A stretch of DNA of 64,000 nt from Vitrella brassicaformis CCMP3155 (GCA_001179505.1 CDMY01000887.1:1-64000), one strand, 5' to 3'. Numbered from the stretch's first letter, positions 27,059-59,684 are shown. Translations and numbers: made by a program. The notes: generated by a model from the letters alone, not told the origin.

Positions 27059-27358
27059 NNNNNNNNNNNNNNNNNNNNNNNNNNNNNNNNNNNNNNNNNN
27101 NNNNNNNNNNNNNNNNNNNNNNNNNNNNNNNNNNNNNNNNNNNNNNNNNNNNNNNNNNNNNNNNNNNNNNNNNNNNNNNNNNNNNNNNNNNNNNNNNNNN
27201 NNNNNNNNNNNNNNNNNNNNNNNNNNNNNNNNNNNNNNNNNNNNNNNNNNNNNNNNNNNNNNNNNNNNNNNNNNNNNNNNNNNNNNNNNNNNNNNNNNNN
27301 NNNNNNNNNNNNNNNNNNNNNNNNNNNNNNNNNNNNNNNNNNNNNNNNNNNNNNNNNN
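27059..27358. other. Assembly gap (300 N)
   Basis: Run of N. Confidence 1.
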
Positions 27359-51830: not shown

Positions 51831-53484
51831 ATGCAGCACTCGCAGCAGCAGCATCCCTTTACACACATCTTTGTCGGCCGGCGCACCTTCTACCTCTTCA
51901 GCATCACAGACATCGTGCGGCTGAGGGCCACGGCAAGGTGGCTCACGGACTTCTTCAGAGCGCTTCAGCTGCGGCAGCGGCTCGCCCACTCGCTCAGGAC
52001 ACAGGCGGGGCTGCGACGGGCGGCCAACAGACAGCCGCCGATGCAGCTGCTGGCAGTGGATGACCAGGAGATGAATCTGCCTGACCTGCTGGTGGCCGTG
52101 TGCATCGTCGAGGAGGGCAGCTGGAAGGAGATGGGCGAGGTCTTTGATCTGGCGGGGCTGTGTGGCAACTGCCAGCTGCCTGTGAGACTCACTGTTGCTG
52201 ATCTCCACCGATTTGTCAGCAGAAGGGTAAGCCGGCATGCAGGTAGGAGGGAGCAGGGGGGGGGGGGGNNNNNNNNNNNNNNNNNNNNNNNNNNNNNNNN
52301 NNNNNNNNNNNNNNNNNNNNNNNNNNNNNNNNNNNNNNNNNNNNNNNNNNNNNNNNNNNNNNNNNNNNNNNNNNNNNNNNNNNNNNNNNNNNNNNNNNNN
52401 NNNNNNNNNNNNNNNNNNNNNNNNNNNNNNNNNNNNNNNNNNNNNNNNNNNNNNNNNNNNNNNNNNNNNNNNNNNNNNNNNNNNNNNNNNNNNNNNNNNN
52501 NNNNNNNNNNNNNNNNNNNNNNNNNNNNNNNNNNNNNNNNNNNNNNNNNNNNNNNNNNNNNNNNNNNNGGGGGGGGGGGGGTTGGTGCGCGTGCCAATGT
52601 GTTGATGTGATGTGTGAGCAGGCGTATGTGTCCGGGCCGCGTGTGCTGGCGCAGCTCAAGATGGTCGGCCACCACATTCACTTCGGCGACGGCGAGACCT
52701 TCCAGGTGTTCCAGCACGGCAACACGGTGCGGGCTATCAAGGACGATAATGGCTTCGAGGTGACGGTCGACCCGGATCTCCCTGCCGGCCACCTGTGCCT
52801 CCAACACCGACGGCAGCATGACCCGCCAGTCAGCAGCAGAATCGGGTATTCTACGCTGGGCTGGAGGCTGGTCTATCCTGCTGCCACTCATTCGTCTGTG
52901 TCGTCATTCATCAAGAGCACCATCCTTGAGCACTTCCAGTCGACTCACGCGAACGACAAGCTCCTCCGATCAATCGACAGGTCAGGCAGACACCGTCATA
53001 AGCGATCGTCTGGAACGCTCGCCCGTATGTCATGTGTGTGTCGTGTCGTTCATCAGGCGTGCTGACAGCGATCGGCTCCGCACCCTCATCACACAATCGC
53101 CCCACACTCCTTTGGAGGGGTGCACAACCACCACCACATGGCAGTGCTACGGCCTCGAATTCCCCGCCTTTCCTGCCCGCCATCGTTATCTCGTGCTGAC
53201 CGGCGCCAGTGACCCCTTCGTCGCGTGGATTCACATGTGGGAGTGGGGCACCTACGGTTGGGCCAACTACGCAGGCAAGAAGAGAAGCACCACCCGATAT
53301 GTATCAGTGCAGCGCTCATTTACCTGGCTGTTTTTCTGCATCTGCAGTGCGTGTGGAGGTCTTCACAACCGAGAAGCCGCTGTCTGGTGTGGGTGCCGCC
53401 TTCAAGGACCGCTTCCCGGAGACCACTCGACTGGCACGTGTGGTGCTGTGGCCGGGCTTCGCAGCCTTGGTCTTCGACCGGTAA
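51831..53484 (+). CDS. Family B F-box-like hypothetical protein, interrupted by a gap inside an intron
   Basis: LFSITDIVRLRATARW, LLVAVCIVEEGSW...CQLPVRLTVADL, HIHFGDGETF, DPPV and AFKDRFPETTRLARVVL...LVFDR*. Homologous to 11730-13046. Confidence 0.75.
52269..52568. other. Assembly gap (300 N) flanked on both sides by 13-nt poly-G
   Basis: N run with G homopolymers at 52256-52268 and 52569-52581. Confidence 1.
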
Positions 53485-53980
53485 GACAGCCGACAGTAGC
53501 TGCAGCAAATATCAAGGACGGGCGGGTTACGTTGCGTGTGCATACCATACGAGTTCATATGCAAAGTGCTGTTCTTGCCCGTTTCTCTCTGTGTGTTTGT
53601 GTGTGTGTGTGTGTGTGTTGTCGGTGTCAGGCCGTGAGTGGACGTTCCGTTCCGTTGATGTGAATGAGAGCGAGGCCCGGGCATATGTGATGTGCATGTA
53701 ACCATGATGCATCAACACCACACACGGCAGCTTTGTGTGCGGAAAAGGGCTGCCTCTGGAGCATTGAGCCTCTCTCACTTTCTGTCTCGTCCATCTGTGC
53801 TTCGTTGACTAGCGGATTTTGTATCGTCATGTGGTTGTTTGCCTACGTACATAAGCAAGGCAAGTGCGTGCGATGCGATGTTCAACCAAGACTTTTTCAA
53901 CGTAATTCACTGCTAAGACTTGGGTGTCGATGTGCAGCCGACTCGTCCATTCATCCGCCCCATTACTGCAGCGGGAGAGG

Positions 53981-56900
53981 ATGTCCACACAGCTTGGCAA
54001 TGAATTCGATCCAGATTCGCTCAATTTGCGAGCTTTGAATATTCCTGTTCCTGCAACACACAGAAGCGCACCCATCGTCCTTCCGCGCGAGAGGTGTATT
54101 GGCAGATGGTGCAACAGAAAGGTAAGCTGCCTGCAGAAGCAACGGAGAAGCACGTGGAGAATCTCATTGTGTGTGCCTCCTGCATGCAGCAAATGGAGTT
54201 GATTCCAAGCACAACTCTGTCTGGCCTGCAGGCAAGATCTTCGACAAGGTGCGAGTGCTCACAGAATCAGGAGGAAAGGCAGCGCGTGTCCGCCTCATTT
54301 CACGTTCCGTCGCTTGCAGGTGCCTCAGCGGACAAAGGAGCAGCTGTGCGTTGTCCTGAAGAACGTACCATACTCATGGTGACAAGCAGAAAGACGCTGC
54401 ACACGCGCCAAGTGTTTTCAATGCTGCTGCTGCTCACTTCTCGATCAGGACCAAGGCTCAGCTGCAACAACACATCCAGCACCAGTGCTCGGCCTTCATC
54501 AGCGCCAACCCTGCAGCTGCCGCAGGGTGCAAGGCACCTGTCATCGCGCACATCGAAATGAAGCCCTTGGTGCCAGTCGCCACCGTGTGCTGCAACGACC
54601 GCGAGAACCGGCAGATCTTCGACCGCATGCGCACCATCACAACCGACGGCAACAAGCCCGACATGCTAGTGCAGGAGTTCCTCAGTGACGCGGAGCGCAA
54701 GGCCCTCAATCAGGCCGCCCTGCAGCCGACGTCTGCCACGCCCTCGTCGAGTGTGGCCTTTCCTCCGTCGCAGAGCGTGGCATCTGATGCGGTGAGCTGG
54801 CCGCCCGGGACGACGTTCAACCAGGTATACGGCACGCACGGTAAATGGCTGACAAGAAAGATGGTTGACGGTTGATTTGGGCGGTAATTGTACGTATGCT
54901 TTGTAGGTTCCTGCTCAAATCCGACAGCGACTGGCGGTCTTCCTTGACAGAGTTCCTAACTATTGGTACGCTGTGTTCCTGTATCCGTTGGCGTGTGCGT
55001 ATTTGGTGATGTGTGCGGGTGTGTCAGGTCAAAGGACGATGTGCACACGCTGGTCGTGACGCACTGCGCAGACTTCATCAAGACAACTCCCGCGGTCGCA
55101 CAAAGCTGCAAAGTGCCCGAGATTGCTGAGGTCTACAGACCATCTTTCGGACCCTACGCGACGCTTTGCTGCAAGGACGACGAAAGCCGCAGGATCTTCC
55201 ACCACATCAAGTACATCAGGACGCCCGATGGGAGGCAGATTCGTGTCATGCCCTTTGTGCCCCGTGATGGGTGAGAAAGCCTGTGACAATCGTTCAGTGA
55301 TGACAGCTTTGACCTTTTGTTGTATGCAGGGATGATCGCAAGTGGGCTCCCACTGCCTCCACTGCATCGCTGCCGCTGTTGTCGACCCTCAAGACGGCTT
55401 CCGAGGCCGCCAACTTCTTCTCAGCCGTCATCCATCCCCTGATGAGACTAGCAGAGGCTGACAAGGACAAGGTCCCCGTGGTGGCCTTGCACGAGCACGC
55501 CGGTCGTCTCGCCATCGGTGCGTGGACAGAGATCGACACCTTCAAGCCCGACGAGCCCAGCACGCCATCACAGGTGTCTCGAGACCCATCGGCTTCCCTT
55601 GACGACTTGCCAGGGCAGGCCGCCACAGCAGGGCAGCAGACGGGGGTCTTCAGCGTTGAGTGGTGGTCGCGCGTGCTTGGGCAGCCTTCCAATGCGATGT
55701 GGCAGAAGAAGGGGGGTCAGGACGCATCGACCAATGGGGCACAGCCGGCTGCCGAGTCGTCGGATGTCGACGATAGCGGCGAGACTCCTGATGATGTGGC
55801 CGACACACAAGAGGAGGACATACTTCGAGCCCTCTGTCAGATCATCGATCGTAAGAGAGAAACACAGAATCCACGGACCATTTGACGTCTGACCGGCTGT
55901 CTGTGATGCTGTCAGAGCGTGGCGGCCGTTCTGCGTTCACCGATGGTCTGCAAATGCTGGCGCAGCTCCCGGTCTTCCGCGAGCGATTCGTCATGCCGGC
56001 CGTCCGATTCGGGTGGATCGCCAGCGCCGGCAGCAAGCCTGAGCTGCGCAAACTCTACGAACGGCTGCGGAAGCTCATCCGGCGCAGGGCAGACGTCTTC
56101 GAGGTGCAGGCCATCGGCAACGCGCCAGCTGCCAACTTCAAAATCAAGCTCGCCCAAGGTGCTGACCGGTACCTCTCGTCCGTCCGTGTGCGCGGGGGCT
56201 CCACTGTGGCGACGGCCAGTGGTGGAGTGGGCAGTCCGCCTGTTGCCACGGTGGCGGTGCTGGAGCTCGAGGGCATGGGGTGCGAGCAGGCTCAGGAGCT
56301 GCTAAAGGGCCTCCTGACCTCCCCGTACGTCCTCAAGGTGGCCTACAACCTGCCCGCCATCATCAAGGCGCTCGAGCTGCCAGCTGCCGAGGCCCCCTCA
56401 TCCATCCGCTTCTGCTGGGACCTGCAGCTAGCGTATGACATCGTTCACCTGACCCCTCTCGCGTCACTCAATGACATCCTCACATGGCGACGCGACACAC
56501 GACCGCCCGCCATCTCGACAGAGCCCTCCAGCAAGGAGAGCGAGGCCGTGGTCTCGGGCTTCCTTCGCGCAGTGGACGAGCTGGCCGCCATGACTTCGCC
56601 AGAGGAGATGCGACTTATCGGCCAGGCGTCCGACCGACGACTCGCCCGCATGGTGGTGGAGGACGGCGGGGCCTCGGCAACTGCTGGCGAGACGCAGGTG
56701 GGCTTCGCCCCTCAGACCTACCAGATGCGCTCGATCGAGGTGCTGGACGTGACGTCGGCCGGCACATCGGTGCCATCGACGGTGCCATCGACGGTGCCTG
56801 CCAGCCAGAGTGAGAATGCGGGCTTGAAGGACTGGACAGACGTCGACACTCTGTTGGACCTGGTGCGCAAGAAACGAGCAATGCCTCACGCCTGTCTGTC

Positions 56901-58695
56901 TGTGAACGTATGCTGCATTGTGTCATGTGCGTCAGGTGCACGAGGACTTTTGGGAGGCAGGCGGCATCCTCGAGGCCACCAGCAATCGCAACAAGGGACC
57001 CACAGCAGCAGCGGCATCAGGCAGCGGTGGTGGCAGTGCACCATCCACGCACCACCTGTACCTTGTCGAGATCGTCTTGTATATCGGGCAGCGGCCGTAC
57101 GCCATCACACGATCGACCCCAAAGAAGAGGTACCTGGTGCCGACCCAGTCGAGTGTGGTCGAGAGGAAGCATCTCGACTTTGCCGTCGACAAGCTGGGTG
57201 GCACAGACAACATCGGGTAAGCAGACACGAAGACAGCTGTTTTCATATAGTGCATGCTGTATCCGTGCAGGCCCGACAATCGTGCCATCCTTCCTGGCTC
57301 TCTGCATCGCATCAGCGCTGTACGGAACAAGTCTGAGGGGCGCACGGTGATCGGCCTGACCATGAGGGTGAGCAGGGAGAATTGGAAGAAAGTGAGAGCA
57401 GCCATTCATTCGTCGTGTGTCGGTCGGCATCCCTCCATCCGCAGGTTGGTCGTGCCATGAAGGGCAACACCGACATGATCCAGGATCTGCTCTTGTCGCC
57501 TGAGAGGGGTGTGGCAGCTGAAGATGGCCTCTCCGTCCTTTTCCTTGGTAGGAGAGGTCTCTCTGTGTGGGCGTCAGGGCCCTGTGTGTTTATTTACTGC
57601 ATGTAGGTGCCCCTGGCTGCGGCAAGACGACCATCATCCGCGAGGCCTCCCGAGTGCTCACTACTGGGGATTTGCAAGTGTGCATCGTCGACACCAGGTA
57701 GCGACCCACCAACAGCTGGCCGCCCATCAGGTGTCATGCAATGACATCTTTTTCTGTCAGCAATGAGATCTGTGGCGGTGGCGATGAGCTGCATCCCTCG
57801 GTTGGCGAGGCCATCCGTCTGATGGTGCCGTGCATCCGCCAGCAGGACAGCGTGATGATTGAGGGGGTCCAGAACCACACAGTAAGTAAGGCGCAGATAG
57901 GACAGGCCGATAAGGGAAGAAAGCCATCACTGTTTAGCTCTTCATTGATGCTCACGCCGTAGCCGGAAGTCATCATTGTGAGTAAGTGGCACGGTGAGTA
58001 AGTGGCACGGTGGACAGCACCGGCTCTATCCGTTCCATAAATGACATGACACACTGCGTGTGACAATGGGCAGGTCGATGCCGCACGCACCATCGCCCAG
58101 CGGAAGGTCCGTCTTCTGGCAACGGCTCACGGCGACTTCGTGAGCCTCTCACGGAATTCGGAGCTTCGGGGGCTGCTGGGAGGCTTTGAGTGAGGCCACC
58201 ATACAGACTCTTTTTGAGAAAGACGACGCTGCTCCTCCTCCTTTGTGTCGATTGTGTGTGTGTGTGTGTGTGTGCAGGACGGTGACGGTGGGCGATGCGC
58301 TGGCGTCGCGTTCGTCTGACGGCCGAAAATCCAAAACTGAGGTACCTACGCACGGAGAGAGAAGACCTGTTTGCCACAAGCTAGGGTGTGTGTGTTGATG
58401 CAGCGGAAAGGTATGCCCCCGTTCGACACGGTGGTGGAGCTGCAGGTGGGTCAGTTCGACGAGTGGCGCATCATACTGGACGTCGCCAAGGCCGTCGACG
58501 CCAGGCTGCAGGTATTGTACATGTGCACACATACATTCGCACACACACACAGTGGACTGACTGGGTGATGCCCGTCTCATGCAGGGCAAGAAGTACTTAG
58601 TGCAGGTGCGTCGCCGGTGCCCGTCGACCGGCCGCGTGTTTGTGAGGTGGGAGGAGACGGCCAGCGATGCAGGCGTCTTCGGAAGCCTGACGTGA
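53981..58695 (+). CDS. Multidomain protein: two RRM-like domains + degenerate 3'-5' exonuclease-like domain + Ycf45/SpoIIIAA-type AAA ATPase (5' end uncertain)
   Basis: CVVLKNVPYSWTKAQL (RNP2-like) and GPYATLCCKD...IRV (RRM-like). LKGLLTSPYVLKVAYN...CWDLQLAY...SLNDIL (exonuclease-like). LVEIVLYIGQRP, DNRAILPGSLHRISAVRN, GLTMRVGRA, LGAPGCGKTT, IVDTSNEI, MIEGVQNHTPEVII, AARTIAQR, ATAHG and PPFD (Ycf45). Confidence 0.8.
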
Positions 58696-59684
58696 CCTCA
58701 CTTAGAGCGATGCGTCCGTGTGCGCCTGCCTTTTTTGCGGGCGTGACCATGTGTGTGTACCATGTGTGTGTTTTGATCACACAGAGGCACCGCCAGCCAG
58801 CCACCAACTAGGTTTTGCCATCTCTCTCTCTTCCCAGCTCTGCACTGACTGTGTATGGGCGTATGTGTTGGCCGTGCGTGGTGAGTACTTGGACGGGACA
58901 CGTTGACAGACAGACATGTTTATGATATGGATGGATGGATGTGTGCGTGAAGGTCGTTTGGTGGATGGCATCGTATATGATGTTGCGTGTCGCACGCCAC
59001 TAATGCCGACTGAGACACCGAGCCAAATCGAACAAGCCAAATCGAACGAGCGTGTGATGTCGTCGTGACCTTGAGTCCTCAGTCCTATGTTGCCAGTCAC
59101 ACGCCCCATTAGCAATCTACCAGCTGGGTATGCACTTGTTTGCCTCTACCAGGAGGCTACAAGGAGGGTCACATCCACACCAGGAGACAAAGATAGTGAA
59201 GCTTTTATGGCGGCCTGAAGAGAACAGCGAATATATATCTGTGTGTCTGAAGCAGCGACACACAGACACTTTCTCAAAAGTCCACTGGTGAAACTCTCGA
59301 GATTCATGTGTGCTGACCTATGTCATGCGAGAATCATGCACGACGGCCGCCTCGAAGTGAGTGAGGCTTTTTACACTTTGTTGTCTATGTCTCGATACAT
59401 ACATGGATAGTACACGCACACACACATACACATACACATACTATACACGCCAAGTCAGCGGACATGAGCGCTACTTCATCAACCACAAACCTCTACTCTT
59501 GCCATCCACCTGTGCACTTGTCTACTCTATCGGCACGCACACACACACACACACACACAGACTGCGTGCGACACAGCACACGCGGACTACAAGTGTCTTT
59601 GGCTGCGACTCACCTGCATCTACCGGCTTGCGAAAAATGCGTCTAATACATGCCTCCCTACGAAGTGTGCCCGTGTGTACTATC

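What the first reader, a model, noticed from the sequence alone, without database searches (positions are those of the whole stretch)
53981..58695. RRM-RRM + pseudo-exonuclease + Ycf45/SpoIIIAA ATPase fusion: candidate novel RNA-handling machine
Ycf45-type ATPases are normally stand-alone bacterial/plastid proteins, often with R3H, of unknown function. Here the domain is C-terminal to two RRM-like domains and a 3'-5' exonuclease fold lacking the ExoI/ExoII acidic residues (as in RNA-binding EXD1/Egalitarian), with no obvious plastid presequence. Every module points to RNA binding or remodelling. I recall exonuclease-Ycf45 fusions in some other eukaryotes (unverified). The RRM-extended, catalytically stripped form looks undescribed.
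Basis: partly seen in the sequence, partly recalled or inferred. Interest (0 to 1): 0.8.

Follow-up and report, generated by a model that had tools for sequence, protein, structure and literature searches.

The report
RRM, dead exonuclease, crippled Ycf45 ATPase
One spliced gene of the alga Vitrella brassicaformis joins two RRM-fold domains, a catalytically dead exonuclease-like domain and a Ycf45-type ATPase that has lost its Walker B motif; it is a lineage-specific offshoot of a widespread, unstudied eukaryotic exonuclease-Ycf45 fusion family.

Summary
The fusion is real. Spliced transcript contigs from two public runs cross all modules in frame, and the public Vitrella protein P0003 (1123 aa) matches every exon I derived. 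The start codon is at 54106, not 53981.

- **RRM domains:** An AlphaFold model of the N-terminal repeat (pLDDT 92) matches only RRMs in the PDB (Z up to 10). No sequence model detects it.
- **Exonuclease-like domain:** About 80 central residues are homologous to the DEDDy exonuclease domain (profile E about 1e-6). The ExoII aspartate is isoleucine, and ExoI and ExoIII cannot be aligned.
- **ATPase:** It is 37% identical to a red-algal Ycf45 homologue (E 2e-54). It sits in a eukaryotic clade of exonuclease-Ycf45 fusions, apart from the R3H-bearing cyanobacterial/plastid clade.

- Exonuclease-Ycf45 fusions are common in protists, and several lineages have degenerate exonuclease domains.
- This copy has lost its Walker B exon. 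The best-supported transcripts carry a 56-nt remnant exon with an in-frame stop. A paralogue (P0001) keeps DEIG.

My reading is a non-catalytic RNA-binding paralogue. Only the RRM extension and the Walker B loss look new. I found no paper on the family.

The parts
54106..58695 (+). Whole coding region: 17 exons encoding 1123 aa, identical to the public protein P0003 of Vitrella brassicaformis CCMP3155.
   Evidence: GT..AG joints in RNA contigs. Exon-by-exon translations all occur in order in P0003.
54216..54695 (+). RRM-like repeat 1 (P0003 residues about 15-127), split over exons 2-4.
   Evidence: Homologous to repeat 2: BLASTP 37% identity, E 2e-15; alignment A2. Both repeats have a 59-nt exon ending in the same split Trp codon.
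54792..55270 (+). RRM-like repeat 2 (P0003 residues about 160-272), split over exons 4-6.
   Evidence: AF2 model has pLDDT 92.3 and pTM 0.84 with beta-alpha-beta-beta-alpha-beta order. The Foldseek top 50 are all RRM proteins. VIA-align gives Z 10.1 for U2AF65 RRM1, 9.7 for TUT1 and 9.4 for TRMT2A.
55330..55850 (+). Exon 7: a conserved block of unknown fold (residues about 285-345 and 385-400) followed by an acidic low-complexity linker.
   Evidence: 41% identical to the paralogue P0001. No family hit in Pfam. No relatives among 75 family proteins.
55918..56217 (+). Helical region, possibly winged-helix-like (residues 446-545). This is unverified.
   Evidence: The only lead is the protein-language-model search, whose best hits are Egalitarian-type clusters (WHD_Egal + PF01612), score 0.85. 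Pfam is negative. The AF2 model of this exon failed, with pLDDT 33.
56245..56490 (+). Core of the degenerate DEDDy exonuclease-like domain (residues 555-636).
   Evidence: An HMM built from 29 exonuclease domains of fusion relatives, with no Vitrella sequence, hits here at E 3e-6 among 75 proteins. hhalign gives probability 90.7%, E 1.3e-6. The ExoII Asp is Ile; ExoI and ExoIII are not alignable.
57062..58695 (+). Ycf45/SpoIIIAA-like P-loop ATPase region (residues about 803-1123), exons 9-17.
   Evidence: BLASTP against the red-algal Ycf45-type protein P0054 (R3H-clade branch): 37% identity over 332 aa, E 2e-54. TIGR02858 E 2.9e-6. Tree placement.
57607..57629 (+). Walker A motif (GAPGCGKT), intact.
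57938..57993 (+). 56-nt cassette exon seen in RNA contigs but absent from the annotated model. Read in frame it gives LFIDAHAVAGSHHCE followed by a stop.
   Evidence: Joints 57881>57938 (run X6) and 57992>58073 (runs X5, X6); translation.
57963..58036 (+). Remains of the ancestral Walker B exon: PEVII (57963-57977), a 2 x 16-nt tandem insert GTGAGTAAGTGGCACG (57978-58009), then VDSTGSIRS (58010-58036). The old donor now reads AT instead of GT.
   Evidence: The paralogue's intact exon reads PVVLIIDEIGHKSQ|gtgaatgac.

Best explanation
Shown:
- This is one expressed Vitrella gene (public protein P0003).
- Its domain order is RRM fold, RRM fold, an unknown region, a degenerate DEDDy-exonuclease-like domain, then a Ycf45/SpoIIIAA-type P-loop domain.
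- It belongs to a eukaryote-wide family in which an RNase D/WRN-type 3'-5' exonuclease domain sits directly upstream of a Ycf45-like ATPase.
- That family is a clade separate from the R3H-bearing cyanobacterial/plastid Ycf45.
- Vitrella has two sister copies.
- Both copies have a dead exonuclease domain and at least one N-terminal RRM-fold domain.
- This copy has duplicated the RRM domain and destroyed its Walker B exon. The paralogue P0001 keeps LIIDEIG.

Inferred:
- The protein has no leader, so it probably works in the cytosol or nucleus.
- It probably acts as a non-catalytic RNA-binding subunit. The RRM folds and the exonuclease-like shell would hold RNA, as the inactive exonuclease folds of EXD1 and Egalitarian do.
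- The P-loop domain can probably still bind nucleotide through Walker A but cannot hydrolyse it.
- It probably acts as a regulatory or adaptor partner of the intact paralogue in a mixed oligomer, not as an autonomous ATP-driven remodeller.
- Inclusion of the 56-nt remnant exon would give a truncated or unstable product and may tune its level.
For: - **One transcript:** spliced contigs span the modules, and all introns are GT..AG and in frame. Every exon matches P0003.
- **RRM fold:**
- **Repeat duplication:**
- **Exonuclease homology without catalytic residues:**
- **Fusion family:** 24 of the 75 length-matched hits carry precomputed PF01612 together with PF19568. My scan confirmed both in 5 of 10 proteins checked, and named members come from Pythium, Chrysophaeum and Boothiomyces.
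- **Tree:** the Vitrella pair is sister (100/100) inside the fusion clade (100/98), apart from the R3H clade (99/95).
- **Walker B loss:** a 14-residue block is missing only from P0003 in the alignment.
- **Selection:** exons after the break still show dN/dS of 0.06-0.25 against the paralogue.
- **No leader:**
Against: - RNA binding was not tested. RNP1 is non-canonical (ATxCC instead of aromatic residues).
- Only about 80 residues of the exonuclease fold are demonstrably retained. The structure model of that exon failed.
- The best-supported transcripts in this region carry a premature stop, so the full-length protein may be rare.
- The exon-skipping junction 57881>58074 used by the annotation was not among the joints displayed.
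- Pairwise dN/dS cannot show that selection still acts on this copy today, and dS is near saturation.
- Hetero-oligomerisation with the paralogue is pure inference.
Confidence: 0.55

Rival explanations
1. This is a duplicate on its way to becoming a pseudogene. After duplication the copy lost its Walker B exon through a donor mutation and a 32-nt insertion that created new donor sites. It now yields mainly transcripts with a premature stop, and the protein has no function of its own.
For: - The best-supported joints include the 56-nt exon that stops the frame.
- An unspliced contig covers 57966-58102.
- Walker B is absent from the annotated protein.
- Pfam finds nothing in P0003 at E 0.01, although the paralogue passes PF19568.
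Against: - All other 16 exons are open and splice in frame.
- Exons downstream of the break are 75-87% identical to the paralogue, with dN/dS 0.06-0.25.
- The gene is transcribed in at least two studies.
- It gained a second RRM repeat that remains intact.
Confidence: 0.25
2. This is a working ATPase made from a minor isoform. Splicing from 57881 to a 15-nt micro-exon (57963-57977, PEVII) and on to 58074 would read NHT-PEVII-VDAAR. That recreates a hydrophobic strand ending in Asp (VIIVD) which could serve as a minimal Walker B.
For: The junctions would be in frame and have AG and GT at the right places. Three further joints were found but not displayed.
Against: - No displayed RNA joint uses that acceptor or donor.
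- The catalytic Glu and nine further residues conserved in every relative would still be missing.
Confidence: 0.08
3. This is the nuclear-encoded plastid Ycf45 of Vitrella, an orthologue of red-algal or cyanobacterial Ycf45 that moved to the nucleus and picked up extra domains.
For: Clear homology to the red-algal protein P0054, a member of the R3H cyanobacterial/plastid clade.
Against: - The ATPase groups with non-plastid-type exonuclease fusions, including oomycete and chytrid proteins, and is separated from the R3H clade by starred branches.
- There is no R3H domain.
- There is no signal or transit peptide; the RRM repeat starts about 14 residues from the start.
Confidence: 0.04
4. The fusion is an annotation or assembly artefact that joins two or more neighbouring genes.
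For: None found. Contigs alone cannot prove a single molecule from the first to the last exon.
Against: - A 2678-nt spliced contig spans the start codon to the Ycf45 homology. A second contig links the exonuclease-like exon to Walker A.
- The frame stays open across all 16 junctions.
- The paralogue on another contig has the same order.
- Relatives in other eukaryotes have exonuclease and ATPase in one protein.
Confidence: 0.03

Closest known systems
Unnamed eukaryotic family of DEDDy 3'-5' exonuclease (PF01612) + Ycf45/SpoIIIAA-like ATPase (PF19568) fusions. Examples are P0004, P0015 and the MMETSP transcript P0023, plus Chrysophaeum taylorii CTAYLR_001646, [Pythium] brassicae PybrP1_002853 and Boothiomyces proteins.
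   Same: The domain order is the same, with the exonuclease-like domain directly N-terminal of the ATPase. The ATPase is 44-54% identical to P0001, and the Vitrella pair sits inside this clade. The family's exonuclease profile detects the Vitrella domain.
   Different: Most members keep all five DEDDy residues. None shows the RRM-like repeats, the exon 7 region or the helical region. All keep Walker B.
Vitrella paralogue P0001 (960 aa, contig CDMY01000672.1)
   Same: Same architecture and the same dead exonuclease domain. Identity is 47% in the RRM repeat, 65-67% in the exon 8 region and 72% in the ATPase.
   Different: It has one RRM-like repeat instead of two, and no further repeat lies within 3 kb upstream. 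Its Walker B LIIDEIGHKSQ is intact and encoded in one exon. It passes the Pfam PF19568 cut-off. Some intron positions differ.
Plastid and cyanobacterial Ycf45 (Synechocystis slr0692; red-algal and diatom plastid ycf45), i.e. the R3H-type AAA proteins
   Same: The P-loop domain is homologous along its whole length (37% identity, E 2e-54). Function is unknown in both; slr0692 is still listed as a hypothetical protein in PMC13139465.
   Different: Those proteins carry C-terminal R3H (PF01424) and PF25516 domains and no exonuclease domain. They form a separate clade, and they keep Walker B.
Egalitarian and EXD1 (animal proteins with an inactive PF01612-type exonuclease fold used for RNA binding). 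This comparison rests on my own knowledge plus a language-model lead.
   Same: An exonuclease-derived domain without catalytic residues, in a protein with other RNA-binding modules. Egalitarian-type clusters are the best feature hits for exon 8 (score 0.85).
   Different: No alignment-based relation was shown. Those proteins have no Ycf45-like ATPase or RRM. The Vitrella domain derives from the fusion family's own exonuclease domain.
Bacillus SpoIIIAA (TIGR02858)
   Same: Same P-loop superfamily. The model matches residues 878-983 at E 2.9e-6.
   Different: The score of 26.7 bits is far below the equivalog cut-off of 281. There is no sporulation context, and the match ends where Walker B should be.

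Membership tests
RRM (RNA recognition motif fold) | Four-stranded sheet packed on two helices in beta-alpha-beta-beta-alpha-beta order | tested here: met
   AF2 model of repeat 2 has pLDDT 92.3 with strands and helices in that order. The top 50 Foldseek hits are all RRM proteins. VIA-align Z is 8.6-10.1 across the top 50, all RRMs.
RRM (RNA recognition motif fold) | Match to a curated RRM sequence model (Pfam RRM_1 or its clan) | tested here: not met
   No RRM family at E up to 10 for any of the three repeats. No relatives of 62-198 aa in 5.8 billion proteins.
RRM (RNA recognition motif fold) | RNP2 and RNP1 motifs with exposed aromatic residues | tested here: inconclusive
   Strand 1 reads VFLDRV (repeat 2), VVLKNV (repeat 1) and VFLSNI (paralogue), which is RNP2-like. 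Strand 3 reads YATLCC, VATVCC and FATVCC, with at most one aromatic residue and an invariant Cys pair.
DEDDy 3'-5' exonuclease (PF01612; RNase D/WRN type) | Sequence or profile homology to the domain | tested here: met
   The family HMM without Vitrella sequences gives E 3e-6 over residues 559-636. hhalign gives probability 90.7%, E 1.3e-6. Pfam PF01612 itself gives no hit. Only the central 80 residues align.
DEDDy 3'-5' exonuclease (PF01612; RNase D/WRN type) | Catalytic residues: ExoI D and E, ExoII D, ExoIII Y and D | tested here: not met
   ExoII Asp is Ile in both Vitrella copies. ExoI and ExoIII columns are unaligned. 18 relatives with the full domain read DEDYD, and 3 N-terminally truncated ones keep the ExoII/III residues.
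DEDDy 3'-5' exonuclease (PF01612; RNase D/WRN type) | Complete exonuclease fold | tested here: inconclusive
   The AF2 model of exon 8 from a two-sequence alignment failed (pLDDT 32.7). No further structure job was available.
Ycf45/SpoIIIAA-like P-loop ATPase (PF19568, TIGR02858) | Homology along the whole domain | tested here: met
   37% identity over 332 aa to the red-algal homologue P0054, E 2e-54. TIGR02858 E 2.9e-6. PF19568 scores only 14.7 bits against a cut-off of 27 for this copy, but 36.6 bits for the paralogue.
Ycf45/SpoIIIAA-like P-loop ATPase (PF19568, TIGR02858) | Walker A (GxxGxGKT) | tested here: met
   GAPGCGKT at residues 921-928.
Ycf45/SpoIIIAA-like P-loop ATPase (PF19568, TIGR02858) | Walker B (hydrophobic strand + DE) | tested here: not met
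   The 14-residue block P-x-V-I-V-I-D-E-I-G is present in all eight compared relatives and absent from P0003. The genomic remnant is split by a 32-nt tandem insert and reads DS, not DE. The RNA-supported exon there ends in a stop.
Plastid/cyanobacterial Ycf45 proper | C-terminal R3H domain, placement in the cyanobacterial/plastid clade, and plastid location | tested here: not met
   No R3H domain. It lies outside the R3H clade, which has 99/95 support. There is no N-terminal leader. Location itself is not testable here.
Eukaryotic exonuclease-Ycf45 fusion family (unnamed) | Exonuclease-type domain directly upstream of the ATPase in one protein, with the ATPase inside the fusion clade | tested here: met

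The most novel reading that the evidence does not exclude
The exonuclease-Ycf45 fusions define an unrecognised, widely conserved eukaryotic RNA 3'-end handling system in which a Ycf45-type ATPase feeds or unfolds RNA for an RNase D-like nuclease. The repeated association of this ATPase with R3H, SAP, RRM-fold and exonuclease modules would then reveal the long-unknown job of Ycf45 itself. In Vitrella the system would have turned into a purely RNA-binding pair: an ATP-hydrolysing subunit (P0001) and a Walker-B-less, double-RRM subunit (this gene) working as a hetero-oligomer.
Probability: 0.2. Interest if true: 0.75.

Novelty: new variant of a known kind. Interest (0 to 1): 0.55.

Why it matters
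Ycf45 is one of the conserved plastid and cyanobacterial reading frames whose function is still unknown. It is still listed as a hypothetical protein in a 2026 Synechocystis study (PMC13139465).

This work shows that its eukaryotic relatives are habitually fused to an RNase D-type exonuclease. In different branches they are also fused to R3H, SAP/WW or RRM-fold modules. That pattern points to nucleic acid, most likely RNA, as the substrate, and it gives concrete proteins to test.

The Vitrella gene adds a natural experiment. Two sister copies exist. Both have dead nuclease domains, and one has also lost Walker B. Comparing them could show what the ATPase contributes.

The gene itself is already in public databases as an unnamed protein. 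The fusion with a dead exonuclease domain is not unique. The surprise is therefore moderate.

Tried and rejected
- **Pfam exon by exon:** nothing beyond weak P-loop hits, because the exons are too short.
- **phmmer of exon 8 against 1.84 billion representatives:** only the paralogue's cluster and a low-complexity protein. Orthologues more than 50% identical would be hidden in that cluster, so absence from Chromera cannot be claimed.
- **PDB sequence searches of the N-terminal 650 residues and of the ATPase:** nothing useful.
- **AF2 of exon 8 with two sequences:** pLDDT 33, unusable. I did not run a fold search on it.
- **Profile search with the three RRM-like repeats:** no hit.
- **Spurious weak Pfam hits dismissed:** Spt46, Lumazine_bd_2, DUF3376 and LRV_FeS, all below their cut-offs.
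- **Second RRM repeat upstream of the paralogue:** none found.
- **Shared domain upstream of the exonuclease domain across the family:** none found.
- **Second HMM iteration:** its alignment included the Vitrella sequences, so I do not count its E 1e-15 as evidence.
rejected because it is out of frame with the RNA-supported donor.
- **Literature:** no paper links Ycf45 or SpoIIIAA-type ATPases with an exonuclease.
- **Joined exons:** Whole-protein steps used the stored public protein P0003 by its id.
Full report
**Source and gene model**

That fits, because the public protein P0003 is labelled Vitrella brassicaformis CCMP3155 and is encoded exactly by this window.

I laid the contigs of four public runs on 53600-59000. 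Run X2 is collinear with the genome, as DNA would be. Runs X5 and X6, and partly X1, carry GT..AG joints, so they are transcript assemblies.

Thirteen joints fix the introns. Read exon by exon, the frame runs open from an ATG at 54106. Every exon translation occurs in order in P0003, with single split codons between them. The remaining exons of P0003 map to 58074-58188, 58278-58341, 58404-58511 and 58585-58695.

Whole-protein steps used the stored protein P0003.

**Is it one gene?**

Yes, as far as contigs can show.

- One X6 contig of 2678 nt covers about 54045 to 57326. That runs from the start codon through both N-terminal repeats and the large exon 8 into the first Ycf45-homologous exons.
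- One X5 contig of 1636 nt links exon 7 to the Walker A exon.
- A paralogue on another contig (P0001, 960 aa) has the same order of parts.

**N-terminal repeats**

Residues about 15-127 and 160-272 are homologous: 37% identity, E 2e-15. They share an exon pattern, a 59-nt exon ending in a split Trp codon.

No sequence method recognises them:
- Pfam found nothing at E up to 10.
- A profile search among 5.8 billion proteins found nothing.

AlphaFold2 on the three available copies gave a confident model, with pLDDT 92.3 and pTM 0.84, and strands and helices in RRM order.

- Foldseek's 50 best PDB matches are all RRM proteins, with E about 1e-3.
- VIA-align gives Z 10.1 for U2AF65 RRM1, 9.7 for TUT1 and 9.4 for TRMT2A. 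204 chains reach Z of 8 or more.
- Language-model features also point only to RRM families, at lead level.

The fold is an RRM. Strand 1 is RNP2-like. Strand 3 is atypical (ATxCC). RNA binding is inferred, not shown.

**Exonuclease-like domain**

Exon 8 alone finds only the paralogue's cluster in 1.84 billion representatives. Its structure model failed.

The way in came from the ATPase. Searching with the paralogue's C-terminal region among proteins of 528-1680 aa returned 75 relatives. Twenty-four of them carry both PF01612 (3'-5' exonuclease) and PF19568 in the precomputed annotation. My own Pfam scan confirmed the pair in 5 of 10 proteins checked.

An HMM built from 29 of their exonuclease domains, with no Vitrella sequence, has the consensus VDCEG ... 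HKDAAAL ... YAAQDV. That is a standard DEDDy domain. It matches P0003 residues 559-636 at E 3e-6 among 75 proteins. hhalign of the Vitrella pair against a 22-sequence family alignment gives probability 90.7% and E 1.3e-6 over 79 columns.

- In that alignment the ExoII aspartate is isoleucine.
- The ExoI and ExoIII segments do not align.
- The VLELEG stretch, the segment that most resembles an ExoI motif, corresponds to the third strand, not to ExoI.
- Eighteen relatives with the full domain read DEDYD, and three N-terminally truncated ones keep the ExoII/III residues. At least a dozen relatives are degenerate, including the Pythium and Boothiomyces proteins.

A dead exonuclease domain next to this ATPase has therefore arisen repeatedly.

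**ATPase**

Residues about 803-1123 are 37% identical over 332 residues to the red-algal Ycf45-type protein P0054 from the R3H clade, E 2e-54.

A maximum-likelihood tree of 73 domains gave these groupings:
- The two Vitrella copies are sisters (100/100).
- They sit inside a clade of exonuclease fusions (100/98).
- The R3H-bearing cyanobacterial/plastid proteins form their own clade (99/95).

The root is only a midpoint, so I make no claim about direction. A 2009 survey already listed YCF45 homologues in Phytophthora and Naegleria, which lack plastids (PMC3087521).

Neither Vitrella protein has an N-terminal leader. This copy's first RRM repeat begins about 14 residues after its start.

**Walker B is gone**

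In an alignment with eight relatives, P0003 alone lacks the 14-residue block around DEIG.

- The paralogue encodes NHT-PVVLIIDEIGHKSQ in one exon, followed by the donor gtgaatgac.
- The window has an extra 81-nt intron after NHT.
- Then comes PEVII, followed by two exact copies of GTGAGTAAGTGGCACG, then VDSTGSIRS.
- The old donor now reads ataaatgac.
- The annotation skips the whole stretch.
- The displayed RNA joints instead include a 56-nt exon (57938-57993) that reads LFIDAHAVAGSHHCE and then a stop. An unspliced contig also exists.
- Three further joints were not displayed, so the skipping form may exist but I could not see it.
- Exons after the break are 75-87% identical to the paralogue, apart from the short 21-codon exon 15 (57%). 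Their dN/dS is 0.06-0.25, with dS near saturation.

This argues for long-term coding constraint but cannot date it.

**Interpretation**

The architecture claim stands. The claim of an ATP-driven machine does not fit this copy. I read it as a non-catalytic, RNA-binding member of a duplicated pair, possibly acting with the intact paralogue. A gene in decay is the main rival.

**Novelty**

I found no paper that links Ycf45 or SpoIIIAA-type ATPases with an exonuclease. Ycf45 itself is still called hypothetical.

The fusion family is visible in databases but appears undescribed in the library I could search. The RRM extension and the Walker B loss are specific to Vitrella in the data I could reach.

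Noticed in passing
window 54216-55270 (alignment A2 columns C44, C58, C78, C79): All three RRM-like repeats keep four invariant cysteines, including an adjacent pair on strand 3 (ATxCC). This could be a metal site or a redox-sensitive site. I could not measure distances in the model.
   Followed up: no
window 57882-58009 versus L001 6160-6237: Compared with its paralogue, this copy has an extra 81-nt intron starting gtaagtaagg and a 2 x 16-nt tandem insert starting gtgagtaag, inside what is one exon in the paralogue. Both new pieces begin with a near-consensus donor, which looks like recent intron or donor creation.
   Followed up: partly
window 56863-56935; L001 4409-4489: Intron positions differ between the paralogues. 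The window has an intron between the linker and the ATPase (DL|VHEDFW) that the paralogue lacks. The paralogue has one inside the helical region (FKV|KLAQ) that the window lacks.
   Followed up: no
protein P0022 (907 aa, metagenome): A relative combines WW and SAP domains with a degenerate exonuclease-like domain and the Ycf45-like ATPase. This is another nucleic-acid-binding module attached to the same ATPase.
   Followed up: partly
window 53631-54013: Transcript contigs of much higher depth than the gene body lie just upstream of the start codon in runs X1, X5 and X6. They could be a 5' UTR, a neighbouring transcript or a repeat.
   Followed up: no
window 27059-27358 and 52269-52568: Two assembly gaps of exactly 300 N each. 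The second lies 1.5 kb upstream of this gene.
   Followed up: no
window 58250-58275: A GT-rich microsatellite lies at the 3' end of the intron 58189-58277.
   Followed up: no
L001 1-2341 and 7075-9817: The paralogue's neighbours are a pseudouridine synthase (PF00849) gene upstream, and glycosyl hydrolase 16-like and C2-domain genes downstream. I did not check for synteny with the window.
   Followed up: no
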